Below are positions 1-62,269 of a DNA stretch of 64,000 nucleotides, piece after piece. Source of the DNA: Macrostomum lignano. Taxonomy: Eukaryota. The notes beneath the pieces are model-generated. The model did not search any database, was not told the DNA's origin, and saw only the letters and a program-made list of their open reading frames with translations. The stretch is from assembly GCA_002269645.1 (NCBI GenBank), contig NIVC01001476.1:1-64000 (forward strand). Direction: 5' to 3'. The stretch's first letter is position 1. Each line of letters opens with the position of its first letter. The position numbers were made by a program, and so were the translations under genes.

Positions 1-3000
1 GCACCAGATCAAATCGATCTTTTGTACATGCAGCGCGAAAATGAAACACATTATATATACATACAAGATATTAGTTCTTTTTTAAGAGAAAATAGAAATA
101 GATATCCACTATGTAGAAATTGTTTTACATTTAAAAAAGGATGAAACAGCTCTTAAAACCACCAACGATTTTGTTTAGATCACAAATTTACTAATGCTAT
201 AATGCCAGCATCTGAAGATGCAACCCTAAGTTCAACAACATTATTGGCAGTTAAAAAACCAATAGTAATATATGCTGATTTTGAAGCAACAAATGTTCCC
301 TTAAAAGAATCACAGACGGTATCTGATGACGATCATGCAAAGCATGCGACCCTACGGGACGGTGAATGCACAAAAAAATTGGCACAACAGTTTCCGAATA
401 GTTATTGTATATATGTACACTCTGTAGCTGATCATATATTTAAATCAAGGATGATTACTTACCACGGTAATGATGCAGCTAAGCACATGGCAGAATCATT
501 AGTAAATGTATTTGAATATATTCAAAATCAATATGATAAATTATCAAAAAATATTAATATGACAAATAAGGATAGAGACAATTATAAAAATGCAACAAAT
601 TGTTTTATGTGCAAAAGACATTTAAGTAAGAATAATAAGATACGAGAACATTGTCATCTAACAGGAAATTATCGAGGGGCAGCATGTAGATCATGTAATG
701 CAAAAGAAGGAAAAGGATGTAAGGAAATACCAGTATTTTTTCATAATGGTTCCGGATATGATTTTCATTTCTTAGTTCGAGAATTGCTTCATTTAGGAAA
801 GGATGAATATGAAATAAATATATTACCTAAAACATCAGAAAATTACATATCAATAACATATGGTAAGAAATACTCCCATCTAGTTTTTCTAGATTCCTTG
901 AGATTCTTATCAACATCTTTAGCAAATGTTGTTTCATCATTAGTTCCAAAACCATGGGATTTAGAAATAGTAAAGAAAAACTTTCCAATCTTATTGAATC
1001 GTTTCAAAAAAGAAAAACTATCCGAGGAAGAACTAATGCTATTAACTCGTAAGGGCATCTACCCATATGAATATGTAACATCTGAAGACGTATTTTTTCA
1101 TACCGAATTACCCCCAATTGAAAAGTTTTATTCAACATTATCACAAACAAACATAAGTGAATCGGATTATGAACACGCTCAAAAAGTATGGAAATACTTT
1201 AATTGTAAAACATTTAAAGATTATCATAATCTATATCTTAAAGCAGATGTTCTCCTATTAGCTGATGCATTTGAAAACTTTAGGAATCATACATATGAGA
1301 ATTTTAAAATTGATCCCGCATATTGTTTCAGTGCACCGGGATTAACATGGGCTTGTGGTTTGAAACATACAGATGTTAAGATTGATTTACTAACTGATCA
1401 TGATATGTTGTTAATGATTGAGAGAGGAATTCGCGGCGGATTCTCGGGTGTACTAGGAGATAGATATACTAAAGTAAATAATAAATATCTTCCAAATTAT
1501 AATAAAAAAGAAAAATCATCATATGTATTATATCTAGATGCAAACAATTTATACGGTGGTTGTATGAAACAAAAATTACCAATAGCTGATTTCCAATGGG
1601 AAGATGACCCCGATTATTACAAAAATATTCCCGAAGGAAGGGGCTGTATCGTAGAAGTGGATTTGCAATATACTCGGGAAGCAAAAGCAAAAACATATAA
1701 ATATCCTTTAGCTCCAGAGCATTGTTCAGTTAATGAAGATGATTTATCACAAACACAAAAAGATTATCTTAAAGTAGATAATGCAAAACATCTAGCAACA
1801 AAAAAATTAATATTAAATTTACATGATAAGAAAAACTATGTAGTGCATTATAAGCTTCTACAATTTTATGAAAACAGGGATTAAAAGTGTCTAAAGTACA
1901 TCGAACAATATCGTTTATTGAGGAAGATTGGTTAGCTAAATATATTGACTTTAATTCAAATCAGAGACAGATGTCAAAAACAAATTTTGAGAAAGATTAT
2001 TGGAAATTAATGAATAATGCTTTTTATGGAAAAACGGTTGAAAATATTAGAGATAGAACCCAATTCCATTTAGAAAAGGATATTGATAAAGCAAAGAAAT
2101 ATTTCTCAAAACCTAACTTTAAAGACTTTATAAAATTTGATGATAACTTTATGGGTATTCATATGAGAAATAAAACAACAAAATTTCTTAAACCAATATT
2201 TATTGGAATGGTTGTTTTAGATTTGCAAAGCTAGTAATGTATGAATACTATTATGATGTTATAAATAAAACATGGCCAGATAACTATCCAATATATGCAG
2301 ACACCGACAGTTTGGTATTTAAGGTTGAAACAGAGGATCGGGCAAAGCCGCGAACCAAAGGTTCGATGTCTATAAAGATATGGAAAAAATTAAGGATACA
2401 CTGGATACCTCCGACTATCCGGATAACCATCCTTTAAAATCAGATCAAAATAAAAAAGTTGTACTTAAAATGAAAGATGAATTAAATAGCAAAATCATAA
2501 CCGAGTTTATAGCAATAAGATCAAAATGCTATGCATTTAAGTTTTAGGACAGGAGGGAGAGGTAAAAAAAATAAAAGGGGTATCAAGGCAGCAGTAAAAA
2601 AGATAACATTTGATGATTATAAAAACGTACTTTTAGATTACCTTAATACAATTGAAAATTATCATGCTCCACAATATCGATTAAATTCAGATAAGCATCA
2701 GATGTTTGTCATCGAGACAGATAAAAAAACATTAAGTCCATTTGATGATAAAAGATATTTAGATGATAAAATTAAAACATATCCATATGGTTTAAAAGAA
2801 GAGATAAAAAATATGATAAAAGATAAAAAACAAAAAGAAGATATAATAAGTAAATATAATGAATACAAAGCGGCAATAAATAATTATTATTACGATTGTG
2901 ATTGTGAATCCGAATGTGATTGTGAATATAATACATTTCTAGAATATGAAAAAGATATAGATAATTATTATTCAACATTTCCAAAAGAACTTAAAAAATT

Positions 3001-5267: not shown

Positions 5268-7310
5268 TTAAGTTATTTCGGTTTGTGGCCGTTCCAAATA
5301 TGCGGTCGCAGCAAAATCATATCCTGCTGATGTGCTACCACAAACGGCTGCACCACGAATAAAATGTGCAGCATCCGATCCTCCAGTTCGAGCACCAAAA
5401 CCCATAAGAGATCCCGTTTTATCTAAAGTTCCCCAAGTTCCACTATCATATGTAAAAAAGTTTTGCCCAATTAGCGTATATGTATTAGCTGATACATTGT
5501 ATGTGCTTATTTGATACCAAACTCTTTGATTTAAAATATTAATTTCAAAAAGATGCCAATCGCCGTTATCAATATTAGCATAGGTTATAGTTTGATCTGC
5601 GTCATTAAGAACATCATTACGAACTGTTGCTCCGTCTGATTTTATATTGCTCCAAACAACCCCAACTCTATCATGCCATTCACTCGCAAACACAATCAAG
5701 CCGGCGCGGGTTGTTAACCCGGATCCAAATTCACTTGTTGGACGTTCGTGACAATATGCATAAAACCAAACAGCGTCAGCTCCATCTCCTGTAGCATTAG
5801 CAACTCGGAAATAGAAGGAGGCGGAGATATTACGAAAATGGGTGAAATTAAATTGCAACGCTCCAGACTGACCACTTGCTTCATCAGTAATTCTACTCCA
5901 TTTTGATAATCAATATAAGTAGCGCTACCAACAAAACTTCCAGTTGGAAAAATATCACCGGCTGTGGTTGGGTTTTGATATCCAGTCCAATTGCAAATTA
6001 CAGGCTCGTACAAAGCGGCATCGATTGCAGGTATTCCATCCAATTTTATTTTATCGTTAAAAGACATTCGGCCATCCGCCGTTTGTGTTACTCGCGTATC
6101 AACATAACCTTTAGTAACAACAGAACTGTTATTGTTTATAGTAGAGATATTAGTAATTGTATTACCTCCCATATCAATTGATTGATTAACCACTCCCAAA
6201 TTTAAATCAAGAATTGTAAACGTCTGTCTATAAATCTGGAAGGTTGACAGACCCGGGTTGGTTGAACCCGAAGTTGATGTAAGACAGAACAATCTGAAAT
6301 ATGAATATGTTTTATCAAAATTTTGTGTGACATTAATTGTTTGAGTTGAGTTATTTATTGCTACAGAACTATCCGCAGGTATTAATACGTCCCAACTTGT
6401 ATTGTCATTACTTCCCTCAAATCGCCATGATGCTGGGTGCTCGGTTGAAGGTGATGGCCTACCACGTAAATCAATTTTATAACACATTATTGCGGAAGGG
6501 CATTGGACTTGAATCCAATAATCGGTTTGAGTATTATTTGTTGCCCAATCTGTTGAATCATTTCCATCAAACGCTTTCCAACTTGCAAAATCAGTTGTAT
6601 TAAATGCAGTGCTTGCGGTTATTGCAAAACCATTTCCACTCCAATCTGCCATGGTAGGTATGTGACCAGTTTCAACCGTTTGGAATCGATCCTGCTTTAA
6701 GGCTCCACCCCAACTAAATTATCAACCTCCGTTTTGGTATAGGAATCAGTTATATCTCTTTTTAAATTTAAGGAATTATCAACTTCAGTTTTGCTATAAG
6801 AATCAGTTATATCTCTTTTTAAATTTAGGGAATTATCAACTTCAGTTTTGCTATAAGAATCAGTTATATCTCTTTTTAAATTTAGGGAATTATCAACTTC
6901 AGTTTTGGTATAGGAATCAGTTATATCTCTTTTTAAATTTAGGGAATTATCAACTTCAGTTTTGGTATAAGAATCGGCCGTATTGCGTTTTAAATTTAAT
7001 GAATCATCTATTTGAGTTCGAGAATAAGAATCAGTTATATCTCTTTTTAAATTTAACCCATTGTCAACTCTGTTTTTGTATATGAATCGGCTACGTTCCG
7101 TTTTAAATTTAGGGAATTATCTATTTGAGTTTTGGTATAGGAATCTGCAACATTTCTTTTTAAATTTAGTTTAGTATCAACTTCACTTTTTTTATAACCT
7201 TCATCTTCATTAATATATCGGTTATCTCCGAATGTAACACTTATTCCACCAGAAGTACCACCACCAGTACTTGATGTTCCGTTCCATGAGGGTGTTCCAG
7301 AAAATAACAT
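5268..7310 (-). CDS. Fibre/receptor-binding-like protein: 19-aa repeats, F5/8 type C (discoidin) domain and L-type lectin-like domain; frameshifted
   Basis: One frame after 1-nt fixes near 7066, 6710 and 5890. Repeats KRDITDSYSKTEVDNSLNL; discoidin-like AWKAFDG...WIQVQ...WRFEGSND; lectin-like ELTDEASGQSGAL, SASFYF..GADAVWF and MGFGARTGG. Confidence 0.75.
6725..7170 (-). repeat. 57-nt coding tandem repeat (~7-8 units) in the fibre gene
   Basis: aacttcagtt recurs at 6781 and 6838 (period 57 nt = 19 aa). Confidence 0.95.
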
Positions 7311-8869: not shown

Positions 8870-9631
8870 TCATTCTTCTTCCTCATCGTCTTCTTTTATA
8901 AGATCTTTTAAGATTCGATTTTTCCTTTCTAACCTCGGATTGATATAAATATGTTTGTATTGGCTATCATCCCAAATTTTTTTACACATACTTTTAAATG
9001 GTTTTGTATCCAATCCAGGATTAAATCTAGCGTGTATATTTTGTAAATCATAATTATCTAAATCAAACATTACACAACAGCTAGCATTCTTTTTTATAAT
9101 CGATTCTAATTCTCTAAAGGATTGAGTAAGATAAAAAGCTCCAATTCCATCTCCTCTACCACTAACAAAAATTTCCTTTTGTAATTCTTGATCACCGTCA
9201 TTAATACAATCATCAAAAATAATTAGTGTTTTATCATTTTTTGGAATTTGATCATAGCCTAATCGGGTTGATACTCTAACAGTTGGGGCTCGTTCGGTAA
9301 TGTTTTCGGGGTGTTGTGCCATTGTTTTACATAAATCCTCAATGTCTGCTAGATTAAATCGCGGTTCGTCATCATCCTCATATTGCTCATATGCTCTTAA
9401 CATTCTAAACAATACATCTTTTTTTAATTTGTTTTTTAATCCATGTTTAAGAAATTCATAATATTTTATTCTAGGTTTGTTAGTATAAATTATTATATTA
9501 TTATAGTCTAACATTCCATCTGTTGTTAATAAATCGTAAACAAAGTGTGTTTTTCCTTTACCTGATCCTCCGATTACTAAACAAAGAAAAGGATCATTTG
9601 GAAATATCTTATCGTGTTTTGCCTTTACCAT
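8870..9631 (-). CDS. A32/FtsK-family genome packaging ATPase
   Basis: Walker A GGSGKGKT, Walker B LIIFDD, and the GRG...YLTQS motif. Confidence 0.93.
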   Translation of the reverse strand: MVKAKHDKIFPNDPFLCLVIGGSGKGKTHFVYDLLTTDGMLDYNNIIIYTNKPRIKYYEFLKHGLKNKLKKDVLFRMLRAYEQYEDDDEPRFNLADIEDLCKTMAQHPENITERAPTVRVSTRLGYDQIPKNDKTLIIFDDCINDGDQELQKEIFVSGRGDGIGAFYLTQSFRELESIIKKNASCCVMFDLDNYDLQNIHARFNPGLDTKPFKSMCKKIWDDSQYKHIYINPRLERKNRILKDLIKEDDEEEE

Positions 9632-9682: not shown

Positions 9683-11153
9683 TTACAATGGTGCGTCCCG
9701 AACAATCGTGCCATCAGCTTTAGCAATTGACATATATTCCTCTAGAAACAATACGTGGGCGTCAAGTGCCTGATTACCGGTTTTATTAATCTCTAACATA
9801 TAATTAAGTCCAATATTGGCTACGTTTTCTTTCTGTGCCGTTAGATCATAAACAACCACTGGATGAATGTTTAGAAACTCTGTGGGTGTGTACTGAGGGA
9901 CGGCATACGCTTCATTTTTAGCATAATCTTGATAATATTTTATAAAATCATTAACATTATTATTTGCAATATTTAGATTAAGAGGATCTTTAACCGGATA
10001 ATATTGATCATCAACCTGCAGGCGGATATTCTGAACATTAAACTCGTTAATAGCTGCAGCCGCATTGTCTGTTGCGGTGGCTGCTTGTTCTGCTATGGCA
10101 CCGGATTGAAGCCAATATAAATCCCCATTTGCTCTTTTACTCCTTCTATTTGTTATTTTAAACCAAACAAAAATATATCTCACCCGACGTTTTGATGTCA
10201 GTATTTGCCACTGGAATGAATCCTGGTTATTATTAATGGTTCGCATAAAATGTCGACGATTCAAATAAAATATTTCCTGATCATGCGTTAACTGATTATC
10301 GATGTGTTTTAAAAGTGGGGCTGTTACCTCAATAGTTGGTACGACTAATTGAATTGAATCTATACGAACTGCTATATCGGTTGAAATTGAGGTTCCATAA
10401 AGTATCCTAGGCTGATATCCACCAGATATTTGCAACTGTATCCCAAATTTTAATCCTTTCCATACCCGATTTGGTGAGAAGAACCCAAATAGCGGAAGAT
10501 TGAAAAGTCCTGCTCATATGCTGTTGCTGTGGTTAAAACCGCGACTGGGAATTTTTCTGACGATCTATAAAACCAGTATTAATATCTTTTGTATTAGTCA
10601 TAGTGGTTACAACTGGAACTATGTTTGTATTAAGGTAAACAATTAGCGCTGCAGTATCTGCACCGGCTGCGTTTTGTACATTAGGGAAAACTACTGCTTG
10701 ACCGTTACCTTTATCCGGCATCCACCCAACATTATCACCAACTTGTTTTGATAAATAAGTATAATTTAAATGTTTCAAAACTCCATTAATCTCTGCGGGG
10801 TTTGATGATGTCTCAACCTCAGCACCATTAACAGTTAGTTGAGCTTGGGAAAAACATTTATAAAACCAATCATTTTCTATTATTATTCCGGATCGATCTG
10901 CGATATCTCCGGCTGCAAGAGCAGTTCCATCATTTCTAGTATACAACCATCTAACGCGGAAAAACGCATTTTTCATATCCAATATAGTGTTGGTTGCGCC
11001 GATGTCAAAAGTTACCGTTCCAGTAGTAAAGTTATTTGAATTATCACTTGTTGGTAGGGTATAATTTAAATCTCTTGCTCTGACCTCATTAATATACTGT
11101 CGGTGCTTTTTGAAATGAAATTTATCACTCCACATAGTTTTTGTTTCAGCCAT
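9683..11153 (-). CDS. Major capsid protein (double jelly-roll), split by two indels near 10490-10545
   Basis: FSQAQLTVNGAEVE, LPLFGFF...GLKFGIQL, NIRLQVDDQYYP and HPVVVYDLT motifs typical of Polinton MCP; ~490 aa when joined. Confidence 0.88.
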
Positions 11154-11886: not shown

Positions 11887-12504
11887 ATGGATGAAACAAA
11901 AATTTGTAATAAATGTAAAGAAGAGAAAATTTTGGATTATTTTAGATTTCGTAGAGATCAAAATAGATATTATAGTATTTGCAAACCTTGTGAGAGAAAG
12001 TATGATAAAGAATGGTATGAGAAAAATCGTGAATATAAGCTTCAATGGAAAAAAGAATATGATAAAAATAATATAGAAAGGCGCAGAAAATATCAAAATG
12101 AAAGAAGATTAACTGATGAAAATTACAAACTTATTTTAAACACACGAAATAGAATATATTCTCTTCTAAAATCTAATAATGCTCGAAAAAATAATCATAC
12201 TGTTGATTACCTTGGTTGCTCAATTGAATTCTTTACTGATTGGTTAAATTTCACAAAACATTATTATGTGCCAAAAGATTATATTGGTGTTTTGCATGTT
12301 GACCATTTTATTCCTGCTTCATCTTTTGATTATCGCGATGAAGAACAAATTAAAAAGTCTGAAAATTGGAGAAATAAAAGATACTTAGTTGCTGTAGATA
12401 ATATTTCAAAAAATGATAAACAACCAACCATAGAAGAATTTGCAAAACAATTGGTGCTTTCATGTATTTTTAAGGCTATTAAAAATGAGCCAAATAGTGT
12501 TTGA
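11887..12504 (+). CDS. Free-standing HNH-type endonuclease with N-terminal Zn finger
   Basis: CNKC...CKPC; helical LNTRNRIYSLLK..YLGCS; HVDHFIPASSFD...NWRN...DNISKND (HNH fold as in NCLDV/phage homing endonucleases). Confidence 0.85.
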   Translation: MDETKICNKCKEEKILDYFRFRRDQNRYYSICKPCERKYDKEWYEKNREYKLQWKKEYDKNNIERRRKYQNERRLTDENYKLILNTRNRIYSLLKSNNARKNNHTVDYLGCSIEFFTDWLNFTKHYYVPKDYIGVLHVDHFIPASSFDYRDEEQIKKSENWRNKRYLVAVDNISKNDKQPTIEEFAKQLVLSCIFKAIKNEPNSV

Positions 12505-14087
12505 AGGAGGATTGTTAGATGTTCAAAAAGGATTAACAAGCTTACCACCAATCTTTACTACTGGAAGGTATACAAATGAATTACACATCCCATCTTACAA
12601 CTTCGCGGGTGGAGCTCGAGCTGTGCCCGAGTGGTAGATGCAAAGCTACTGCTAGTCACTATTAGTGGCAACACCAGCCGCTCACTCAATCCCCTAAAGC
12701 TTCAAGTACCACTTTGTTTTCGAAAGATTACAAAGGAACAGAGGTAACTCCTCTTCCCAACGGTAACAAGCTTGAAGATAAATATATGGGCAAGAGTGAA
12801 TCGAAAACCTAACCTCATATGACTTGAGTATGGTTGAGATGCAACGACTGTACGCTGGTGGGCTTGAAGGACTTAGTCAATCCTTATGATAGCTTAAGAC
12901 ACAGTCTACTCCTTTGTGAAAGCAAAGGTATAAAGGCCGGGTTGACTCGACTCGATCTCCGATTAAATCCTGATAATACTCCAAAAGCCGATTCAATTCC
13001 CATTAACGGTATTGATTGGTTAGCATACTATCATGACTTAGCATACAGAGATGCTGATAAGAACTCACCCGAGGAAGCATTAAGATTAAAACATGAAGCC
13101 GATCAAAAAATGATTCAAGGATTAGATAACTTGCAGGGATTATCAGTAGGTCAGAGATTAACTAGGTGGATGGTTAAAAAGATTTTGCAGTCTAAAGTTA
13201 AATTTGGTTTGGGAATTAATTATAATCAACATGGAAATAATTGTGTTGAGTGTTTACTATTAAGTGGCAGTGGGTTAAGTTCTGATGAGGCAAAGATTCT
13301 TCATAAAGAATATCGAAAACCTAAATTTTATAGAAAAATCATGAACTTCAAAAAGAATGAAATTTGGTATGCTGATTTAATGTCGATGCCGAAAGATCTG
13401 GGATATAAATATATCTTAACCATATTAGATGGTTTTACTCGATACGCGTGGGCTGTTCCTTTAAAATCCAAAAAGGGAGAGGAGGTTGCTGCTGCTTTTA
13501 GAAGTCTTGGAGAAAAAAGCGAACGTTTGTGTGTTGACGAAGGAAAAGAATTTTACAATCCTCATATGTATAAATTATATCATTTTGAAAAAGGACAAGA
13601 AAGGAAAAAAGACGCGAATGGGGAGTATATTAATAAAATTTATTCTATTTATGGAGAGAGTAAAAACGCATTAATAGAAAGATTTAATAGAACTTTAGGT
13701 AAGAAATTATGGTTTCAGTTTAGTCTTAATGGTAACCAAAAATGGGTAAAAATATTACCAGACGTAGTGAAAGATTATAACAATTCATATCATTCGGCGA
13801 TAAAGATGACTCCTCAACAAGCTTATAACAATCCTGAAAACGTTAAAGTTACTTTTGGAAAATTTGAAAAAAATAAAAAGAAATCTTTTAAGGTTGGTGA
13901 TTCTGTTTATATCTATAAATGGAAAGATAAGTTTGAAAAAGGAAGAAAAGGATATTGGAAGATAAGTGAGAAATTTACTATCAGTAAAGTTTTAAATACC
14001 AATCCTACAACCTATATAATTGCTGATAAGGACGGTGAAGAAATATTGGGTTCGTTTTATGAGAACCAACTAATATCAGCGAACTAA
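12485..14087 (+). CDS. Parvovirus-type phospholipase A2 domain fused to rve (DDE) integrase; interrupted by a group I intron (exon 1 12485-12610, exon 2 ~12936-14087)
   Basis: Exon 1 ends ELHIPSYNFAG. Exon 2 continues xGLTRLDLRL..PINGID..YYHDLAY..EAD (PLA2), then LHKEYRK, WYADL, VDEGKEF, IERFNRTL, YNNSYHSAIKMTP and FKVGD (integrase). Confidence 0.9.
12611..12936 (+). ncRNA. Group I self-splicing intron (IC1/IE-like core, ORF-less); 3' splice G at 12935 or 12936
   Basis: P1 cgggU/Gcccg with U.G at 12610/12625; P3 12672-78/12854-60; P4 12682-87/12794-99; P5abc; P6a/b; P7 a[c]gactgt/acagtct; J8/7 UAAGAC; P8; P9 with GAAA loop. Confidence 0.92.
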
Positions 14088-14707: not shown

Positions 14708-14978
14708 AGTAGTAGTATAGAAAAAGACGCTTCTAGATCAGACCTTATTTTAATGGCCGTTTGTAAGGTCTTAAGAGGGGGGACGCGAGGGGGGTGTTAG
14801 GGAGTGTTTGGAAGTGTTGGGAAGTGATTTTTATTGTTAGGGGTGATTATGGGTGATTAGATGTGTTAAGGGTGTTTAGATGTGTTTTTTTATTTACCCC
14901 CCGTGTCCCCCCTCTAGACCCTTAAAACGGTCATTAAAAAAGTGCTCTGGGTCTAGAAGCGTCTTTTTATATACTACT
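14708..14978. repeat. Right terminal region of the Polinton: ~85-bp imperfect inverted arms (14711-14796 / 14896-14978)
   Basis: AGTAGTATAGAAAAAGACGCTTCTAGA... at 14711 matches the reverse complement of ...TCTAGAAGCGTCTTTTTATATACTACT ending at 14978. Confidence 0.9.
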
Positions 14979-15269: not shown

Positions 15270-16035
15270 ACCAACTTAAAATCCGGATTTTCTGTGCTGT
15301 CGTGCTGCCGATATTCCTTTACGGTCTCGAAGCTCTGCCGGTCACGGAATCTCGCAACCAGGCTCTCGACGCCACCTTCAGAGCTTTGCTGCGGTTTGCT
15401 CTCGATCTCCGCTACCCTGAAGGGCTGTCAAACCGTGCGCTCGCTGCTCGCTCCGGCGTCCCACCAGTGAGCTCCCTCCTGAGAGCGCGGCGACTTCGCG
15501 GCAATGTGCTACGCAGCTACGTTCGAGGGGAAATGAACCCCCTTGCGGTTGTCGTGCTCAATCCGCTATGCGCATACATGCGCAACAGTCTGCCGAGTCG
15601 GCCGATTTGGTGGCCAACCAAGGAAGTCGCAAAAATACCCACCCAAAAATTGTAGTAGTACTAAGTAGCTGACGAGGCGTTTTGGCTTAATAAGACAGTC
15701 ATAGTTACTCCTGCCGTTTACCCAAAGTTGCATTAATTTTGCTTTAGTTTTTTTTACATGTAAGTCGCATTTTTGGCCAAAAAACTACGTCGCATTTTTG
15801 TTAAAACTAAGTCGCATGGCCGACCGAATTTTGGAGGTTGCGCATGCATGTCTATGCGACCCATACCGTCGCGGACATGCGCGCACTGAGACGCTTCTAA
15901 AGAACTTTGCTAGTGACCTTCAAGCCATCTACCTCACCCCACTTGAGGCCACTTCCTGCCCCTCTGAGCTTTTTCGCGAGCGTGTGAGCGCTAAGGTTTT
16001 TGACTCTATAGCGTCTTTTTATCTATCTATCTACC
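15270..16035 (+). mobile_element. 5'-truncated RTE-clade non-LTR retrotransposon (RT C-terminal region), split by a MITE
   Basis: PIFLYGLE..LDATFRALLR..RARRLR, then VLNPLC|DPYRRGHARTETL across the MITE; ends in a (TATC)n tail. Confidence 0.75.
15573..15850. mobile_element. hAT-type MITE (~280 bp), copy 1
   Basis: TIR CATACATGCGCAAC/GTTGCGCATGCATG; 8-bp TSD gctatgcg/tctatgcg; homologous to 57486-57771. Confidence 0.85.
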
Positions 16036-16066
16036 AGCTAATTAATAAAAATATTAAGTAGCACAC

Positions 16067-16663
16067 CTGATCCATAGCGTTAGCGGCGTCGTCCTCCGAT
16101 TCGAACGTGACAAACGCCTTCGGCTTGTTGTTGGCTTTGGAGTCGCCAAACCGGCCGGCGAGGCCGCCAGCGCGATTCTCCATAGCGATGCGCGAGATCG
16201 GACCGAACGGGCTGAACGCCGACCGGAGCATATCTGGATGGATATTGTAGCCCTGCACGAATAGAGTGTTGCCACGGGGCTTATTGGGCTCGGCGCTGTT
16301 CCCTGACGGGGTAGCTGGCGCCGGATCCTGTACGCCGCCAGAAACGAAGCTGTCGTAGAGATTCGAGCGCGGCCGCTTGGCTGGCGGCTGCTGCAGCTGA
16401 TTCTGATGCTGTTGAATCTCGTCAGAGCCGCCGCCAGTAGGCGAGTAGGGCCGATAAGCGGAGACTGGGCCAGTCGAATCGCGGCCTTTCTTCATCAATA
16501 CCCGAGGCGGGCAGGCGCTTTGTATTTTAATTTTGCCCAGTTTCACCAGGCGCTCAGCCGCCACCCTGGCATCTTCGTTAGGCTTAACCGGCGTTTCCTC
16601 CTTCTCGCGATTTGTCTCGGCCTCGGCCGCTTGCCGGCTGCGCAGCTCAGTCAGCTGTTTTCT
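16067..16663 (-). CDS. NELFE: Negative elongation factor E, internal coding exon containing most of the RRM
   Basis: AERLVKLGKIK and RGNTLFVQG..MLRSAFSPFG..AFVTF match NELF-E; AG acceptor at 16665-64, GT donor at 16066-65. Other exons were not located. Confidence 0.85.
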
Positions 16664-27930: not shown

Positions 27931-28702
27931 GACAAGGAAGCTACGTGCCTTCTGCACTTCCTCACTGTTCAAATCAAATTTAAAACGGATCTGAACATTG
28001 CAAACATTGATTTGAACTATTGAGCTATTTATAGCGCGGTACCATGAACTGACCATTAGGAGGCGTAGAGATGAGGTACATGTACATCTTCGAATGATTC
28101 TGTACTCACTATTGCCTTCCAATAAAAAAATCGCCGTTTCGATTTTGTGATAATGACTCATCTACACCGTCATTAAGCTGTTAAATCGCACGACACGTAT
28201 ATTTTACCGTTTTTTTTCATACGTTGTAATTTCTCAGTATACATTGGACAAAGCAGATTAAGAGTAACTCTCTAACCCTCAGTTTGGCCACCCCAGGTTG
28301 CCAATGACGCGAAGTGTACAACGGCGCTCAGTATCCATGGGGTTGGGCTCTGCAGAGGCGGGTGTGAATCCATGCAATTGGGGCAGGGAAGTGCATGCGA
28401 GACTCCTGAAGTCGCACGCCTGTACTCGCGTTTCCGTACTTGCAGTCTTACGGCTTCTCTTACCCCCGCGCTCGCGTGCTTCTAAAAATTGTCTGCTCTG
28501 AACTGCAGTGGCTGCACTGTGAGCATATAGGCTGCATAGTAGAAAGTTTTACCCCTGCAACAATTTACCTGGGAAAACACTGCTGTTACTGCTCAGGACA
28601 GAAGGGTGAGACGCTGCGCATCAATAATATGGGAGGCCAAGCCGCTACAACTAAATATTAGTTCCTATATGTGAAAGCCATCGCAGATTGATACCAGAAG
28701 CA

Positions 28703-31700
28703 ATGGGCACGACTGTAGAGGATGTGCTCACCTGTCCTGTGTGCTTGAGTCGCTTCACCGACCCCCGGCTGCTGCCCTGCCAGCACACCTTCTGTCTGCG
28801 GCCCTGTCTGGTGAACATCTACGACGAGTCAGTGCGGTCAATCCGATGCCCGCTGTGCCGCGAGCTCAGCCGGGCTGCCCGAGGCCCGGAGAATTTGCCT
28901 CGGAACCTCACAGTCACGGCACTGCTTGGCGTGCAGCAGCAGCAACGTCAGCAGACGCCTCCGTCGCAGTCGCAAACGAATCGACCTCAAGTAGCTGAAA
29001 GCTCGACTGAGTCACCAGAGTCGGAGGTGGAACTGAGACGTCGTCTAGACGCATCGGCTAGTCGGCTGAGCGCCGCCGTGCCCGCCCTGCTTTCCGAGGC
29101 CGCCCGCCTTCGCTCCGTGGCCGCCGATATCGAGGCCTCCTCGGCCAGACAGAGCGCCCGGCTGGCTGCCTCTGTAGACTCACTCGCCGAGCAGCTGGCG
29201 GAGCGACGAGCGCAGCTGCTAGCCGACATCGCGGCGGCCTCGGCAAGCCGGCTGGAGTCCCTCTACGCCGCGCTGGACTCGCTGGAGGTGGAGGCGGCCA
29301 GCGCCAGCAGCTGCTGCGAGTCGCTGCCGCCGCCCGGAGCGCCAGTGGAAGAACTCCGTCGCCGACTGGACGCTTGCGAAGACGCCGCCAGGAGACTCGC
29401 CGGCGCCGCGGTCGCCGACTGGTCCGAGGTGGCGACCGATGTCGGCGGTTCTGCGGCGGTCGAGTTGCCGGTGAACGCGGAGCCAGTCAGCCGGGCCATC
29501 GCGGCTTTGGGCCGCCAGTCGTCGCTGTCGGGCGGCGGCTACCCGGCGGAGCTGCTGGTGGCCAACAATTATCGGACGCCGTTGAATCCTCAGCGCGCTG
29601 GCAGTCGGCAACAGCAGCCGCAGCGTCAGAGCCGAATTCCCGAGCGTCAAAATCTCTCCGCTTCGGATGACAGCCGAGGCGGCGGCGGCGGCGGTGGCGC
29701 ATTCATAAGTTTTGCTAATCCGGCATTTCGCGGAAATCGACGACCGCCAAGACTGAGCTCCGACAACGCAACGTCTGGCGCGGCCGGCAGTGGCGCAGGC
29801 GAACGGGGAGTCGGAGCTGGAGGCGCAGGGGGTAGGGTTAACGCATCAAGACGAGCAGCGAATGCAGCAATCCGAAGGCAGGAACAACAGCAGCACAATA
29901 ATCAACAGCAACAGCAACAACAGCAGCAACAACAGCAGCAGCAACAACAGCAGCAGCAACAACAGCAGCAGCAACAACAGCAGCAGCAACCGTCAGATGA
30001 TGAGTCGCCTTCCTCGTCGGAACCCCATCAACAGCTGACAATGGTCCAGAGGTCGGGAACTTTTGTTCTGTCGCGCGCGAATCGACCGGTTGCATTTCAG
30101 GTTTGTTTTAGTGATTCGTTTTTTTATTAATATTTGTTTCTTGGAAAATACTGAAACGCGAATTGCCTGGGAGTCTATTCGAATACCCTGTCTGAACTCA
30201 ACTCAGCCTTCATTTAGCTTCGATCCCCAAATCCCCTCTCCAGGTGTCCCTGGACGGCAACGGCGACCCGTCGGACCTATCGGTGTCCGCCGGCGAGGAC
30301 GCCTCCTATTTGGCTCGCAGCGCACCGTGTGGCGTCTTCGGCCTCGGGCCCAGCGCCGAGGTCGGCCAGCTGAGCGCGCCGCGCGGCATCGCGGCCTGTC
30401 CCCGCACCGGCGCCCTGTTCGTGGCCGACTCCAACAATCACCGACTGCAGGCTTTCTCTCTGACTGGTCAGGTTCGGCTGGCGTTCGGGCGGCGCGGCTC
30501 TGGCCCAGGAGAATTCGAGTGCGTCACCGGGGTGGCGGTGGACCCGTCTTCCCGGCGGGTGTTCGCCACGGACCGCTACAATCACAAGGTGCTGGTGTTT
30601 GACTACCAGGTGAGGGTGTCAATTTTTATAGTGTACGTTCTAACTACAGATTCTATTCCATGCCACTCCGTGAAAACCCCGCGGTTCAGACCATAGACTG
30701 TAGCTTCTGCTGCTCTCCAGCATAAGTAGCAGCAACTACGAGGTGTCTGTGGCCCAAACCCCCCCCCCCCTGGGTTTTCGGGGCCTCGGAGACGGCCGCT
30801 AAATACATTAGCAAATGATGGAGTGACTAATCTAGGTAATATAGAATCTGCAGTGGCTCTAACCGCTAGTTGAATGCTTGAATGACCATAGAAACATCGA
30901 TATGTACATGTAGCTGCGGAATTTTGTAGGATTGTTAGTAGCTAGTGTTGCCAATCATAACGAGAAGCGGTAGTTTAAGTATTTAAAAAGATCAGATTTT
31001 GGTAGCTTTTGACGATCGAAATGGGAATTTGGACAATCAAAACGGAACGCCATAGACATTAAAGCCAGGCCACAGATCGCACCTTAGTCATGAACTTAAG
31101 CAGTTTAGCAAAGTCTACTGAGGGAGGCTTGGCCATAGACTATAACTTTGGACATTCAATATGGGAAAAGCCATTGTCATTAATTTTTGCGGGCTTAAGC
31201 GTCCCTTTTCCGGGCGTCAATGTGACAATTCGTGCCTTGAATTGTCTATGGTATTTTCTATTTCAGTAATAGAGCGAAATAGAACAACAGTGTGAAACAG
31301 AGACCAACAAATAACAGCAAAGTTTATGCGCTTATAAGCATGCAAAGAGAGACGATCAGTTAGTTAAATTAAATTAGTCTTTCAGGCCGTGGAAATCGAA
31401 CGTACAATTTTGAAATGTTCCATAGAAATTCACACTGACCGATGGAGCTGGCACAGCCTGCTCAACTTGTCCTTCAGCAAGACGATCTCGAGCAAGGACG
31501 CTCGTCCTTTGTTCGCAGTGTCGAATAGAAGAAACGCAAATAATTAGCCAGAATCGACTTTGGAATTCGCAGCAGATCCGTTGACAGTTTCATTTCTTCC
31601 AGAAAAGTCTTGAAGCGGCTCACATTGTCCTCCATCTGCCGGGCGGAGGAGTCCGGTATTCCATCTCGTTCAAGCTGATTTAACTCTTGCATCACGTCCT

Positions 31701-36886: not shown

Positions 36887-39289
<2,403 letters not shown>

Positions 39290-43300: not shown

Positions 43301-46300
43301 ACACACACAAGGGCAGATTTGGGGGGGGGGGTTTGGTCATAGGTTTATGGTGTCTTACTACTAAGTTGATATGGTGCCTATTGTCTACCACTTTCAAGAT
43401 TGGTTACAAGTGAAGTGGTGACCAATGTACCTTTGTAACGCCATGCTAGCTTAGTCTATCTAAGCAACTTGTTTTAAGGCTTATGTTTAATTTATGGGTT
43501 TTGTTAAAGTAAAACTTTAATTTTTTTGAATTTATTTAATTTAGAAATAGTTTCAAGAACTTAAATTTAGCAAGCTTAAAGTTTATAAGTTTAAAAAATA
43601 AAGATCACTAGTGGCCTATATCTAGGTAAAGGTCATCTATAGTTAATACAAGCTTCTATTCTTCTTTATTTGCTCATCTCTAATCTTTTATTCCCTCTCT
43701 TATAAGGTAAGAAAATTTACAGACATTTCTGCTAAAGATAAGAAGGGAGAAGAGGGGATTGAGGAGAGAGAAGAGAAAAAGGAGGTAGGAAAAGAGGGGA
43801 AATGGGGAGAGAAGGGGAAGAAAGAGAAGAGAGGGGAAAAAGGAATAGGGAGAAAAGAAAGGAGAGAAATGAGGGAAAAGATGAGCAAACAATAATTATA
43901 AAACCTGCAGAATTGATTTTGAGATAGAAATATTTTCAAACTAACACTCCATGCTAAGATGATTTCAAAATTCAAAATTGCATATTTTTAACCCTAACAT
44001 TCTTAGAAAAATGAGATATAGTATCTAATTCCATGCCTTAAATAGCATTTGCCTTAAATATTTGTATTTAATATTATTTATTAGGCCTAGCCTAATGCAC
44101 TCCTTAGAAAATTGTGAGTCTATTAGGCCCCTAATCCAAGTCCTATCTTTTTATAACTATAGGCCTAACTTACCGTTTGGGAGTCCATAGTAAATCTATG
44201 AATGCATAGACACATTAGACAGACACACAGAGTTTTATAAAATTTGATTCTGATAATTTAAAACTTTGCTTTTGGTAGGCCTAATGTTAGGTCTCTGTTT
44301 ATTAGATCATATTTATATATATAAATAAGTATATAGGGCTTAACATCCTATTTTATTGGTAAAAGCATATGCAGTATAATAGTGATATATAATATAGAGG
44401 AATAGGGTCATAAATATGAATTGGAATTGCATGGAATAGGATGCAGGGTAAAGGTATAAACAATTTGCAAAGCAGTAAATCATTGTTAGGATAAGTAGAA
44501 TGTGCATTTTGTGTTAGAATTTATAAGTAGCACTATAGCAGGTAAGCAGGGAATATATAAATATATACAGACAATGGAGTTTAAGTTCGGAGTACAATAA
44601 ATAGGATTTTTTATATTGCACACTATGAATGTTTATTTAATACCATTTTTCAAGTATCAGCTCTATCACTATCAAATGGAACAAAGTCTATTAGGCCCCT
44701 ACTGATAGGCCTACTGATAGAGTTTGACTAAGCATTTTAACTAGGCCTATCAATGAGTTTATTTCTAAGTTTAATAAAAATTATTTTATTGAATGACATA
44801 GGCCTAACAAATACAAATAGCAGTATATATTGATAGGTCGTAGGTGTTATGTAGTCATGTTAATTACTTTCCAAATCCTGACTTGGCTTCTCTGATGCCT
44901 CCACTTCTTCTGTGTGCTGACTTGCCTCTCCTTTGCCACTGACACTGCTCAAGTTTTTGTTGCTGTCCATGCTACTCAGGTCTACTGAATTTAGAAGGCT
45001 GCCGCTGTTATTGAATTCCTCTTGCAATTTTTCAAGGTCAGTCTGCTTTTCTTTAAGTCATTTCTTTAGTGTCCTGTTTTCCTCCTTGACATTGTTCAGT
45101 TGTCGCTTAAATGTCTGTCTCTCGTTCTATTTATTTCTATTAGCAGCCTTATTAGCAGCCTATCTTTGTTCTCTCTCAGTCTCTGCGCTGTTGTTTCTGC
45201 ATTTCGAGCAGCTGACATTCTGGTTTTTAGGAGAGGAGTTCTGGTTCTGGAATCGACTGCCGTGAAGAGGCTCCTAGATGATCATTATCGCCCTAGAAGT
45301 TCTATAAATTTTATTTTAAAATTTAAAATTTAAAATTAGGCCTAAACAATTTTGTACATTTAAACTGTAAGTGCTAGATAAAATAGATAAAACAGCTAGG
45401 TAAAACTTTTGACAGGTTCATCGAAGAGCCTCTTCACGGCAAATCGATTCTTGAACCAGAATCGGTTCGGATTTCCAAGAAAAAAAAACAGTATAACTAT
45501 TTAACTTTGTTGAATGTTTGACTGCCTTAACAGCCTCACTTTGCACAATTTCTCACTTTCTTCTTGGCTATTGCCATTCAATAATCACAGTTTTAAAGCA
45601 CTAATATCCCTCTAGTTTAGGAGACAAAAAGTTATAGGCCTACTTTACAATATTGGTTTTGGTTCTAAAACCAGAAGAAGCAATATGAAGAGCCTCGAAC
45701 AGATTAGGTTGGCCTGAAGAAAGAGGATTACGAATGAAAAAAAAATTCAGCAAAAATTATATATTCATGCATTAAATAAGAACAGTTAGTTAAGCCACGC
45801 GGTTTTAAATTATAAAATTTCATTTGAAAATTTTTGAAATTTTTAATTTTCAAATTTGAAATCAAGTTGCAAATTTGAAAGTTTGCAACTAAAAATTATG
45901 AGATTTGATGAAAATCATCTTCAGTTATTGCTGGATTTTTATTTATTTTCATGTTGCTTAATTACACGTTTAGTAAGGCTATATAATGTTCAACTCAGCG
46001 TGAAAGTCTCTAAGCCTTTTCTTTTTAACAATTCCAGAACCAGAATCCATTTTAAGCTTTTCATATGGCCTGTTCGGTTTTCAGAACCGGTTCCAGAAGC
46101 GTGTTTTGGTTCTGGAATTTGGATTGAGAAATTTTCTTGATCCGTTATCATGTTCACACTTTATTCTTTAACAGTAGAATATATTTGAAATTGTTAATTT
46201 TTATTATTATCAACATATTAATACTCTGTTGTTTGTCTTATCCAAGACAAAGCAAAGTTAGGGCCTAGGCCCCCCTAAGGAAAGACAAATTTAGGTTTTA

Positions 46301-46935: not shown

Positions 46936-48964
46936 TCTCTACCTATAAAAACCAAAACTCTGTCTGTCTGTGGACAAATTACTTCGCTATGGACTCCCAA
47001 ACCGCTCAACCAAATGACACCAAACTTTACACCCACCCTAAACTTACTACGGAAAATGTCTTAGGCTACCTTTAAATTTCCTAGACTCAAGTCTTCCTAC
47101 CTAAAAGTACAAAAAACTGCTCAAAATGTGCAATTTTTTCACTTAATCCTCCATAGTGCCGTTCCACTTTTACCGATTCTCTTCAAATTTGACACAATCA
47201 ATCTTCAACTATTTTGGAACAATCATGTAAAATTTCAAGTCTCAAAGTTAATCCTGAATGGCGCTGTGTACTTTTAAAGTTAGGCTGCTTTTTTCAGCAA
47301 GGCAGCCACCCCAACCTCCGCCCGCCTGCCTCTCTTTCCCGATCCCAATCTGGGCCCTGATGTGTAAAAGGTTTTCAAAATTGACTAACTTTCAGCTGCC
47401 ATAAGTTTGCTCCAAATAAAGCGATTGACTTTAAACTTGACACAATTCTTCATTGACTCATTCTCTGTCTACATGTAAAGTTTCAACTCTGTAACTCAAC
47501 CGAAAAAGAAACTGTAAGCATGTAAAGTTTGTCTGCTTTTTCTGTTGTTTGTGCCACTCACTCACTTATTCTCCCAGAGCCAGACAAAGGGTCAGGCGAT
47601 AGGGCTAAATGTACATAGCAAATGTACAGTGTTTTGGAATAACTTTTTAATAGCCTTCTCTGCACCCCGAGAGTGGAGAGGCTACGTTTAGCCATAACAG
47701 TTTAGTGAGAAATTCTAACCACTGCCCTCCCCTCTGTATAGGCAAACTCTGTAGCAGTTTAACAGTGGATGGCAATTGGCAAATCGAGGGAATCCAGCAT
47801 TGTTTGTAAAAGCGAAAGATTTATGAAAAGGCGATGCGATGCAATGCAATACAACCTTACTAAATTAGGCACACCAGACAGCATGGAAATTTTAAGTTTC
47901 TCTTAAAAGTACTTTAAAATTTAAATGGCCTCCTAAGAAATGCATATTTCCTTGGTTGTTAGACTGATGCAGACTGCAGTGGAGCTGAAGATACACAAAT
48001 TCCTTTCAGGGCTGCAAATTGGCAAGAAAAATGACGTGATCAAAGCATGAGAATAACGATAAGAGTAGTACGTCCCACAAACTGGCTTTCGAAGCAGGGA
48101 TTGGCAGACTTTTATTTCAAAAGCCAGATAAAGAATCCAGCTTATGTGCGGGCCAGATGAGAGTGGAAAGGAGAAGGAATAGACTATTCGAAGAGAGGAG
48201 AGGCGAGAGGGGGATAAGAGAAAACATGGATGATAAGAGGAGAGACAAGTGGTGAGGAGAGAGCAGAGAAGAAGGGAGGAAGAAGCGAGAGGAGGGGAGA
48301 AAGGAGGGAGAGGAAAGAGTAAAGGTGAGAAGAGGTGAGAGATGAGACAGAGGATCAATGAGAGGAGAGTAAAGAAGAGTGAGAAGAGAGTAGAGATGAG
48401 AGAGGAGAAAGATGACAGAGAGTCAAGAGGAGAGGAGAGAGTAGAAAGGATAGAGAAGAGAAGAGATAAGAGGGGGAGAGAGGAGTGAGAAGAGAAGAGA
48501 TAGAGATAAGAGAGGGGTGTAAGAAGAGGGGAGAAAGGAGAGATGAGATTGTAGAGATGAGACAAATGAAAAAAGAGATGAGAGAGTAAAGATGAGAGAT
48601 GAAAAAGGTGAGAGGAGAGTGCAGAGAGACGAGAGAAGATAATAGAGGAGAGAGAGAGTATAGAAGAGGGAAGAGAAAAGAAGAGAAGAGTAAGGAAAGA
48701 GAGGAGTCAGAAGAGGTGAAAGAGAAGAGTACAGAGGAGATAAGTGAGAGAACGTATAAGAGAGTAAAGATGACAGATGAGAGAGCAGAGATGAGGGTAA
48801 ACAGACGAGAGATGGGAGAGTAGAGAGAACAGAGGAGAGAGAAGAGATTACAGAGACTAGAGGAGAGAGGAGAGACAGGGAGGGAGAAGAGGAAATAGGA
48901 GAATGAAGAGGGGAGAGAGTAGAGAGGAGAAGAGAGATGGGAGAAGAGAGATAAGAGAGAGAGA

Positions 48965-49011
<47 letters not shown>

Positions 49012-49777
49012 CGCAGAGCAGAGAGAAAAGATAAAAGAATGGAAAGGAGAGATGAGAGAGTAGAGGAGAGAGTTGAGAGATGAGAGAAAAGAATAGAGAG
49101 GAGAAGGAAGAGACGAGAGAAGAGGGGGAGAGAGGAGAGAGGAGAGGAGAGAGAAAACGAAAAAGTAGAGAGGAGGGAGGAGAGGAGAGAGAAAAGAAGA
49201 GGGAATTGAGATGAGATAAGAGATATGAAAGAGAAGAAAGATGAGGGAGGATACAAAAGAAGATGGGAGAGAGGAGAGAGGAGAGGAGAGGAGAGAGAAA
49301 ACGAAAGAGGAGAGAGGAGAGAGGAGAGCAGAGAGAAAACAAAAAGTAGAAAGCAGAGAGGAGAGGAGAGAGAGAAAAGAATAGGGAAGAGATGAGGGAA
49401 GATATGAGAGAAGAGAAGAGAGAAGAGAGAGGAGAGACGAGGGACAAGAGAGAAGAAAGGAAACAGAAGAGACGATAGAAATTTTAAAAGATCCAAGGGA
49501 CATAGGGAGAGTCAGGGAGAGGCCAGAGTTTGCCAATACATGTTTTAGAGTCAGACAGACATTGCCTGACATTCTGCGCAGTACCCCAGCCAACAATATC
49601 AACGTTTGCCTCAAACCCTAATTTTACACGAATGTGCTCCACTTTATGTCTACCTCTATCCTACTAACTATTAACAAGTTTTTGTTTGTGTATGGCCTTA
49701 GATTTCAGAATACATGCAAAAGTAGTTCTGGGTATTGGAATTCCCCGGGTTCAAAATCCGCGGGTTTCAACAGCTTG
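46936..49777 (+). mobile_element. Non-autonomous Helitron-like element, copy 1 (contains a long AG-rich tract)
   Basis: A|TC 5' end with TATAAAAA..CTGTCTGTCTGT; 3' GC-rich palindromic ccccgggt..ccgcggg then ACAGCTTG|T. Confidence 0.75.
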
Positions 49778-51717: not shown

Positions 51718-51811
<94 letters not shown>

Positions 51812-62170: not shown

Positions 62171-62269
62171 AAAAGTATATAGTGCAACATTTCCTTTTAG
62201 CTTTCTAGGGGCTCCTTTATGATTGGCATGACGCTTCTTATTACGTTTAAAAATGTCTCTCCTGTGTTT

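What the first reader, a model, noticed from the sequence alone, without database searches (positions are those of the whole stretch)
12606..12945. Group I self-splicing intron inside the PLA2-integrase gene of an animal Polinton
Seen: the PLA2 frame breaks at YNFAG| (U12610) and resumes ~326 nt later, and the insert folds into a complete group I core. Pairings: P1 (cgggU 12606-10 with Gcccg 12625-29, U.G at the splice site); P2 (12631-52); P2.1 (12655-69); perfect 7-bp P3 (12672-78/12854-60); 6-bp P4 (12682-87/12794-99); A-rich J4/5; P5a with the A-rich bulge GGUAACAAGC (12762-71); L5b GAAA (12722-25); P5c; the 11-nt tetraloop receptor CCUAAC/UAUGG in P6a/b (12808-13/12829-33); P7 with G-site (12844-51/12901-07); J8/7 UAAGAC; P8; P9 with GAAA loop; and a plausible P10 (12938-45 with 12616-23). 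Knowledge: the P5abc, A-bulge and receptor set is the Tetrahymena-type (IC1) architecture, while GCAACGACU at J6/7-P7 is IE-like. The insertion falls in the YxGxG Ca-binding loop, a conserved site of the kind group I introns favour. To my knowledge group I introns are not described in animal nuclear DNA or Polintons. Inference: a virus-borne ribozyme delivered into an animal genome. The 3' G is uncertain: 12935 gives FAG-AGLT in frame, while 12936 gives FAG-PGLT but needs a 1-nt correction.
Basis: partly seen in the sequence, partly recalled or inferred. Interest (0 to 1): 0.96.

Follow-up and report, generated by a model that had tools for sequence, protein, structure and literature searches.

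The report
Group I intron in animal Polinton
A 325-base ribozyme-type (group I) intron interrupts the phospholipase-integrase gene of a virus-like Polinton element integrated in an animal chromosome, a place where this kind of intron has not been reported in the literature searched.

Summary
Window 12611-12935 (+) matches Rfam's group I intron model over its full length (42.9 bits, E 1.3e-9; below the curated score of 50, and found only when a short stretch is searched). The two flanking frames encode the two halves of a parvovirus-type PLA2 domain fused to an rve integrase. 139 of 197 relatives read straight through the site and none encodes the insert. Splicing after U12610 and G12935 is in frame and gives a YxGxG-type calcium loop, one residue longer than in relatives. 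The host element is a Polinton (protein-primed PolB, A32 ATPase, integrase), and the contig is animal (a Pbx-type homeobox gene lies 23 kb away). Corrections: the claimed P10 is no better than chance; the IC1/IE subgroup was not testable; group I introns were reported in Polinton-like viruses of protists in 2025, so only the animal setting is new. Self-splicing is inferred, not shown, and the element's polymerase gene is broken. About 24 relatives' gene calls break off at the same site, which hints at a shared intron.

The parts
12485..12610 (+). Exon 1 of the PLA2-integrase gene (42 codons, ends ...YNFAG on a complete codon)
   Evidence: Translation. Residues 11-42 match the N-termini of uninterrupted relatives P0001 (E 8e-19), P0004 (9e-16) and P0027 (6e-7).
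12611..12935 (+). Group I intron, 325 nt, 44% GC, with no internal ORF of note
   Evidence: RF00028 at 12627-12928, 42.9 bits, E 1.3e-9, full model. Helices verified. Fold z = -3.2 on the sense strand only. Absent from all relatives' proteins.
12606..12629 (+). P1 hairpin: 5' exon end plus first intron base (12606-11) paired with the internal guide (12624-29); U12610-G12625 wobble at the 5' splice site
   Evidence: 6/6 pairs; also present in the MFE.
12631..12669 (+). P2 (12631-52) and P2.1 (12655-69) hairpins
12672..12678 (+). P3 5' strand; pairs with 12854-12860 (7/7)
12682..12799 (+). P4-P5-P5abc domain: P4 12682-87/12794-99; P5 12692-94/12788-90; P5a with AACAA bulge at 12765-69; P5b with GAAA loop at 12722-25; P5c 12740-54
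12800..12840 (+). P6/P6a/P6b with an internal loop (12808-13 / 12829-33) that fits 10 of 11 positions of the GAAA-tetraloop 11-nt receptor
   Evidence: Receptor parts as described in PMC2275092.
12844..12851 (+). P7 5' strand with bulged C12845 next to the G12846-C12906 pair (the expected guanosine-binding site); pairs with 12901-12907
   Evidence: P7 duplex -7.8 kcal/mol. The role of the pair comes from general knowledge of group I introns.
12861..12894 (+). P8 hairpin (4 + 5 bp)
12911..12928 (+). P9 hairpin with GAAA loop
12935..12935 (+). Terminal G of the intron (3' splice site); the only choice that keeps the frame as the sequence stands
   Evidence: Codon phases.
12936..14087 (+). Exon 2: remainder of the PLA2 domain (HD dyad) plus rve integrase core, 383 codons and stop, no internal stops
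88..2848 (+). Protein-primed family-B DNA polymerase gene of the Polinton, with an Endonuclease VII/HNH domain; broken (frame changes)
8870..9631 (-). A32-type packaging ATPase of the element
   Evidence: PF04665, E 1e-7.
36887..39059 (-). Host gene: Pbx/Extradenticle-type TALE homeobox (PBC domain exon and homeodomain exon); marks the contig as animal
   Evidence: PF03792 E 2e-55; PF00046 E 8e-16.

Best explanation
Window 12611-12935 is a group I intron lying in sense orientation inside the PLA2-integrase gene of a Polinton (Maverick) element integrated in an animal nuclear genome. It splits the codons of the PLA2 calcium-binding loop. The expected mechanism is the standard two-step group I reaction, which is inferred here and not shown. 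First, a free guanosine bound at the P7 site (G12846-C12906, next to bulged C12845) attacks the bond after U12610, which sits in a U-G wobble in P1. Then the terminal G12935 takes that site and the freed exon end attacks after it, joining 12610 to 12936. The result is one open frame of 42 + 383 codons encoding a PLA2 domain (loop F-A-G-A-G, HD dyad) fused to an rve integrase. The fold is probably held together by a Tetrahymena-like P5abc arm, whose GAAA loop can dock on the receptor-like loop in P6a/6b. The intron has no endonuclease gene of its own, so it is carried passively by the element.
For: Shown: full-length RF00028 match, E 1.3e-9. All core helices pair, with the U-G at the 5' site, the P3/P7 pseudoknot topology, and GAAA loops in L5b and L9. 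Stability is specific to the sense strand. Exon 1 and exon 2, searched separately, land next to each other on uninterrupted relatives. 139 of 197 relatives read through the loop and none encodes the insert. Pfam's PLA2 profile is covered at positions 2-66 in the intron-less P0001, but only at 21-68 by exon 2 alone. Exon 2 has no stops, keeps 66 of 77 strongly conserved columns (its nearest full-length relative keeps a similar share), and keeps all but one of the near-invariant H/D/E columns. Element identity: pPolB family, A32 ATPase, rve similar to retroviral integrase cores. Animal host: PBC domain plus homeodomain, and the named pPolB relatives come from mussel, clam, Hydra, a sea anemone and a hemichordate. 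Inferred: catalysis, in vivo splicing, and the tertiary contacts.
Against: The score is below Rfam's curated gathering score (42.9 against 50), and the hit disappears when 4.5 kb or 64 kb is searched. J3/4 (CGC) is not A-rich, which I believe is atypical. P10 is not above chance. The spliced loop would be one residue longer than in every relative examined. No covariation evidence exists, because no homologous intron DNA was examined. The element's polymerase gene is broken by up to 4 frame changes, so this copy may be decaying and the ribozyme may no longer be under selection. No expression data were available.
Confidence: 0.72

Rival explanations
1. The insert is a genuine group I intron by descent but is now an inactive relic. 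The Polinton copy is decaying, the ribozyme no longer splices, or does so inefficiently or only with protein help, and the PLA2-integrase gene is effectively dead.
For: The polymerase gene of the same element is broken by up to 4 frame changes. No capsid or protease gene could be recognised among the short ORFs. The score is below the gathering score. The junction is one residue longer than in relatives. The share of conserved columns kept is lower than in most relatives (0.857 against a median of 0.968).
Against: All core pairings are intact, including 7/7 in P3, 6/6 in P4 and 6 contiguous pairs in P7. Exon 2 has no stop in 383 codons and keeps its catalytic residues. The nearest full-length relative shows the same lower conservation share, which points to a divergent clade and not to decay. 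The frame changes in the polymerase could be assembly indel errors in AT-rich DNA.
Confidence: 0.2
2. The insert is an ordinary spliceosomal intron, or an unrelated insertion, that resembles a group I intron only by accident.
For: 22 in-frame GT/GC-AG combinations exist around the insert. The host is an animal with a spliceosome.
Against: The stretch bounded by homology starts GG, not GT/GC. None of the 22 combinations reproduces the junction defined by relatives: the good GT donors either delete the conserved block before the loop or add residues that break the YxGxG pattern. A chance full-length model match at E 1.3e-9, together with a P5abc arm and a receptor-like loop in the right places, is very unlikely.
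Confidence: 0.03
3. The element does not belong to the animal chromosome. The contig is a chimera, or the element comes from a protist or other associate sequenced along with the animal.
For: Composition changes sharply near 14-16 kb. Group I introns in such elements have so far been reported only from protists (PMC12220804). No terminal inverted repeat or target-site duplication could be checked, because the left end lies at or beyond base 1.
Against: The element and the Pbx-type gene lie on one contig 23 kb apart. The closest named polymerase relatives are annotated in animal genome assemblies on multi-megabase contigs. A change in composition is expected for a recently integrated element.
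Confidence: 0.05

Closest known systems
Group I introns (RF00028) in Polinton-like viruses of protists (Paulinella, Desmodesmus, Rhodomonas); PMC12220804, 2025
   Same: The same Rfam family, similar size (309-376 bp against 325), carried by small integrating dsDNA virus-like elements. Those authors describe them inside 'genes' of about 50 codons, much like the 50-codon read-through ORF that exon 1 gives here.
   Different: Those hosts are protists, the introns sit just upstream of the capsid gene and not in an integrase, and exon continuity was not worked out. Here the host is an animal, the element has pPolB and an integrase, and both exons are identified by homology.
Tetrahymena-type nuclear rRNA group I intron (the P4-P6 domain with P5abc; described in PMC3439887 and PMC2275092)
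   Same: P2 and P2.1, a three-way P5abc arm with an A-rich bulge, a GAAA loop on P5b, a receptor-like internal loop in P6a/6b (10 of 11 positions) and a GAAA loop on P9.
   Different: This intron sits in a protein-coding gene and not in rRNA, and has a short 3' domain (P9 only). One receptor position differs, and J3/4 is not A-rich. Subgroup membership was not tested, and the resemblance to the Tetrahymena intron rests partly on my own knowledge.
[quoted passage not shown] 1994)
   Same: A group I intron inside a protein-coding gene of a eukaryotic dsDNA virus.
   Different: That is a giant virus of algae that is not integrated in an animal genome, and its intron belongs to a different subgroup.
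Mitochondrial group I introns of sponges, cnidarians and placozoans (PMC5360047, PMC10964413)
   Same: Group I introns found in animals, in protein-coding genes.
   Different: Those are organellar, often carry homing endonuclease genes, and are not on a nuclear chromosome or in a virus-like element.
Adintovirus PLA2X and PLA2 proteins of Polinton-like viruses (PMC8502044, PMC11296320)
   Same: The same parvovirus-VP1-type PLA2 domain (PF08398) in Polinton-related elements of animals.
   Different: There it is fused to a pX-like domain or stands alone. Here, and in a family of relatives of about 370-470 aa, it is fused to the rve integrase. No intron is reported there.

Membership tests
Group I intron | Significant full-length match to the family covariance model (sequence plus structure) | tested here: met
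   RF00028, model positions 1-253/253, 42.9 bits, E 1.3e-9 for the 651-nt search, which is about 1e-7 when scaled to the window.
Group I intron | Reaches Rfam's curated gathering score (an annotation threshold, not a biological criterion) | tested here: not met
   42.9 against 50 bits. The hit is also lost to the speed filters in 4.5-kb and 64-kb inputs.
Group I intron | Conserved core P3-P9 with P3 and P7 crossing (pseudoknot), plus J8/7 | tested here: met
   P3 7/7, P4 6/6, P5 3, P6/P6a 6, P7 7 with one bulge, P8 9, P9 7.
Group I intron | 5' splice site after a U in a U-G wobble within P1, formed with an internal guide sequence | tested here: met
   U12610-G12625 within a 6-bp P1. The site coincides with the end of exon-1 homology.
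Group I intron | Terminal G at the 3' splice site, giving an in-frame ligated product | tested here: met
   G12935. Codon phases. The product loop fits YxGxG but is one residue longer than in relatives.
Group I intron | P10 pairing of the 3' exon with the guide sequence (common but not universal) | tested here: inconclusive
   The best pairing, 7 of 8, is matched by 31% of shuffles.
Group I intron | Compensatory base changes among homologous introns | not tested
This needs DNA from relatives.
Group I intron | Guanosine-dependent self-splicing | not testable with these tools
   No expression or biochemical data are available here.
Subgroup IC1 (Tetrahymena type) versus IE | Subgroup-specific core and peripheral features (P5abc, P2/P2.1, P7 characteristics, 3' extensions) | tested here: inconclusive
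   [quoted passage not shown] No subgroup models were available. PMC10964413 gives only the basis of the classification.
Polinton / Maverick | Protein-primed family-B DNA polymerase | tested here: met
   More than 4,400 relatives, many with PF03175 + PF02945, aligning over window 88-2848. The gene is broken here.
Polinton / Maverick | Retrovirus-like (rve) integrase | tested here: met
   PF00665; PFV integrase core, E 2e-6. More distant relatives carry chromodomains.
Polinton / Maverick | A32/FtsK-type packaging ATPase | tested here: met
   PF04665, E 1e-7.
Polinton / Maverick | Double jelly-roll major capsid protein, penton protein and cysteine protease | tested here: inconclusive
   None was recognised by Pfam, PHROGs, PDB sequence search or a homology search of one candidate ORF. 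The ORFs are short and possibly broken. No structure prediction was made.
Polinton / Maverick | Terminal inverted repeats and target-site duplication | not testable with these tools
   The left end is at or beyond base 1, and no matching inverted repeat was found.
Parvovirus-type PLA2 domain (PF08398) | Profile match plus calcium loop and HD catalytic dyad | tested here: met
   Exon 2 alone scores 19.2 bits (cutoff 23.9) over profile positions 21-68, while the uninterrupted relatives P0001 and P0005 pass. The HD dyad and the downstream D are kept. The loop is completed only across the splice.
Spliceosomal intron | GT/GC-AG boundaries at the junction defined by homology | tested here: not met
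   The insert begins GG, and no in-frame GT/GC-AG pair reproduces the junction.

The most novel reading that the evidence does not exclude
The intron is not a one-off. A group I intron at this calcium-loop site is shared by a sizeable minority of PLA2 and PLA2-integrase genes in animal Polintons and their relatives. It is actively removed from polymerase-II-type transcripts in animal nuclei. That would be the first ribozyme-type intron operating in animal nuclear gene expression, overlooked until now because standard Rfam scans with default filters and the gathering score miss it.
Probability: 0.3. Interest if true: 0.85.

Novelty: new member of a known kind. Interest (0 to 1): 0.66.

Why it matters
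[quoted passage not shown] The animal cases I found described are mitochondrial (PMC5360047). A well-formed group I intron in a protein-coding gene on an animal chromosome, brought in by a Polinton, extends the 2025 finding in protist Polinton-like viruses to animals and to the integrase gene. It shows a route by which ribozymes reach animal genomes. It also raises a testable question: can such an intron splice from nuclear mRNA-type transcripts in an animal? There is a practical lesson too. The hit is invisible to routine whole-contig Rfam scans, so such introns may be systematically missed. The short upstream 'genes' and N-terminally truncated PLA2 or integrase gene calls in databases may be their footprint.

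Tried and rejected
(1) Whole-window Rfam scans at the gathering and E-value thresholds found no intron. This proved to be a filter effect, not evidence of absence. (2) Rfam scans of the rest of the element in 4.5-kb pieces found nothing. A positive control of the same size also missed the known intron, so these negatives say nothing. (3) blastn and nhmmer with the intron as query found no second copy in the window. (4) A blastn search of the intron against phage genomes found no match. (5) A spliceosomal reading was enumerated and rejected. (6) P10 was tested and is not above chance. (7) A host look-up by the RING-finger ORF found nothing on record, so the host is named only as 'an animal'. 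(8) Capsid and protease genes were not identified. The 250-aa ORF next to the ATPase has no detectable relatives. (9) No terminal inverted repeats were found within the window. (10) I considered whether the Endonuclease VII/HNH domain is a homing endonuclease for the intron. I rejected that, because the domain is an integral part of the polymerase throughout this large family (compare PMC10748475). (11) The supplements of PMC12220804 held no searchable table of its intron hits.

Full report
OBSERVATION. An ATG at 12485 opens a frame that ends ...PSYNFAG on a complete codon at 12610 and then reads into a stop inside the insert. A second frame, with its codon phase at 12936, reads AGLT..., carries an HDxxY motif and continues into an rve integrase core. 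The stretch between them, 12611-12935, is 325 nt long, not a multiple of three, and has no ORF of note.

IS IT A GROUP I INTRON? When 12450-13100 is searched alone, Rfam's RF00028 matches 12627-12928 on the + strand over the whole model (1-253 of 253) at 42.9 bits, E 1.3e-9. That is below the curated gathering score of 50. The hit is also lost to Infernal's speed filters when 64 kb or even 4.5 kb is searched. P1 has six pairs, with U12610 in a wobble with G12625. P2, P2.1, a perfect 7-bp P3 and a 6-bp P4 follow. P5 leads into a three-way P5abc arm with an AACAA bulge and a GAAA loop on P5b. P6/P6a/P6b enclose an asymmetric internal loop. P7 has a bulged C next to a G-C pair. P8 follows, and P9 has a GAAA loop. 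The sense strand folds better than all 100 shuffles (z = -3.2), whereas the antisense strand does not (z = -0.8). The unconstrained fold recovers 65 of the 84 nested model pairs. The internal loop at 12808-13 / 12829-33 fits 10 of the 11 positions of the GAAA-tetraloop receptor as its parts are described in PMC2275092. It differs at position 6, where that paper reports tolerance to change. The proposed P10 is not above chance. J3/4 is CGC, which I believe is unusual. Subgroup (IC1 or IE) could not be tested.

IS THE INSERT NON-CODING, AND WHERE ARE THE JUNCTIONS? I searched the two exons separately and by reference. The exon-2 product has 126 relatives, many carrying both PF08398 (parvovirus-type PLA2) and PF00665 (rve). 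Exon 1 residues 11-42 match the N-termini of P0001 and P0004 (E 8e-19 and 9e-16), and exon 2 resumes two residues further on in the same proteins. In a set of 197 relatives with a PLA2 match, 139 read continuously through an aromatic-x-G-x-x-T loop, and none has extra residues there. Pfam shows the split directly: the profile is covered at positions 2-66 in the uninterrupted P0001, but only at 21-68 by exon 2 here. Splicing after U12610 and G12935 keeps the frame and gives F-A-G-A-G-L-T. This fits YxGxG (P0045 naturally has G-A-G-T), but it is one residue longer than in every relative examined. A spliceosomal reading fails: the insert begins GG, and none of the 22 in-frame GT/GC-AG pairs reproduces the junction defined by homology.

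STATE OF THE GENE. Exon 2 has no internal stop and covers relatives almost end to end. It keeps 66 of 77 columns that are at least 90% conserved, and all but one of the near-invariant H/D/E columns. The nearest full-length relative keeps a similar share, so the lower figure looks like a trait of the clade. Apart from the intron I count no breaks in this gene.

THE ELEMENT AND THE HOST. The ORF at 202-1884 belongs to a family of more than 4,400 proteins, many with PF03175 (protein-primed PolB) plus an Endonuclease VII/HNH domain. The named members come from Mytilus, Ruditapes, Hydra, a sea anemone and a hemichordate. Relatives align collinearly over window 88-2848 in up to five pieces in three frames. 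That means up to four frame changes (one to four, depending on the relative) and no inserted DNA, so the polymerase gene is broken or the assembly has indel errors. With the A32 ATPase and the integrase, this supports 'Polinton'. Capsid and protease genes were not recognised, and no terminal repeats could be checked. The flank has minisatellites, GA microsatellites and no tRNA genes. It also encodes a PBC domain (E 2e-55) next to a TALE homeodomain. To my knowledge that gene class is specific to animals. I saw no sign that the contig is human.

A LEAD FROM PROTEINS ALONE. The PLA2 part, searched on its own, has 219 representative relatives. Most are stand-alone proteins of 80-250 aa, and some are fusions of 370-450 aa. 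About ten gene calls carry unrelated residues immediately upstream of the junction. Fourteen begin within six residues of it, and three separate clusters begin M-P-G-T. Of the 25 calls that start inside the domain, 14 start in its first ten residues (P between 4e-9 and 9e-4, depending on the assumed span). This is what an interruption at the same site in other elements would produce, but it does not show that those interruptions are introns.

STEPS LEFT OUT. Because the host is an animal, I did not fetch DNA of the element's relatives by look-up, pattern or accession. There is therefore no covariation test and no direct comparison of intron-containing and intron-less alleles.

LITERATURE. RF00028 introns of 309-376 bp were reported in 2025 in Polinton-like viruses of three protist groups, inside 'genes' of about 50 codons (PMC12220804). 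A 2024 review states that nuclear group I introns are so far restricted to rRNA genes, and that metazoans lack group I introns apart from basal lineages and some sharks (PMC10964413). [quoted passage not shown] PLA2 domains are known in adintoviruses and Polinton-like viruses (PMC8502044, PMC11296320). I found no report of a group I intron in an animal Polinton or in animal nuclear protein-coding DNA.

VERDICT. This is a real and well-formed group I intron in a new setting. Its activity is unproven, and the copy that carries it may be decaying. I rate it a new member of a known kind, with interest 0.66.

Noticed in passing
window 88-2848 (+): The Polinton's protein-primed DNA polymerase carries an Endonuclease VII/HNH domain, as do many relatives. 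Here it is broken by up to four frame changes, with no inserted DNA. Either this copy is decaying or the assembly has indel errors.
   Followed up: partly
window 12450-13100 compared with longer inputs: The intron is reported by Rfam only when a short stretch is searched. It is missed in 4.5-kb and 64-kb inputs and lies below the gathering score. Routine scans would overlook introns like this one.
   Followed up: yes
relatives P0003, P0023, P0043, P0018, P0009, P0243, P0263, P0325 and others (proteins only): About 24 of 197 relatives' gene calls start or diverge exactly at the point where the window's intron sits, and three clusters begin M-P-G-T. This may be the footprint of same-site interruptions in other elements.
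   Followed up: partly
window 5714-6652 (-): An element ORF with an F5/8 type C (discoidin) domain, E 5e-12. It may be a surface or attachment protein of the element.
   Followed up: no
window 6717-7197: A 57-nt unit repeated 8.5 times (80% matches) inside the element, between recognisable ORFs.
   Followed up: no
window 9683-10435 (-): A 250-aa ORF next to the packaging ATPase with no detectable relatives among 5.8 billion proteins and no Pfam, PHROGs or PDB match. Its neighbour at 10533-11153 is equally unassigned.
   Followed up: partly
window 14711-14737 / 14952-14978: A 27-nt inverted repeat (96% complementary), with arms 214 nt apart, just beyond the integrase stop and near the probable right end of the element.
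   Followed up: no
window 36887-39059 (-), 28688-30130 (+), 16031-16564 (-): Host genes: a Pbx/Extradenticle-type homeobox gene in two large exons, with a 21-nt x 46 satellite (37508-38502) between them; a RING-finger ORF with a long polyglutamine run; and an RRM-domain exon.
   Followed up: partly
window 48360-49472 and 51603-52061: Long, imperfect GA-rich microsatellite blocks with extreme purine skew. The long 'ORFs' listed there are artefacts of the repeat.
   Followed up: no
window 62265-64000: A 23-nt satellite of about 76 copies that runs to the end of the window.
   Followed up: no
window 53331-53475 (+) and 45240-45460 (-): Weak matches to the microRNA families mir-4536 and MIR7533, far below their gathering scores and lying next to tandem or inverted repeats. 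They are probably chance hairpins.
   Followed up: no
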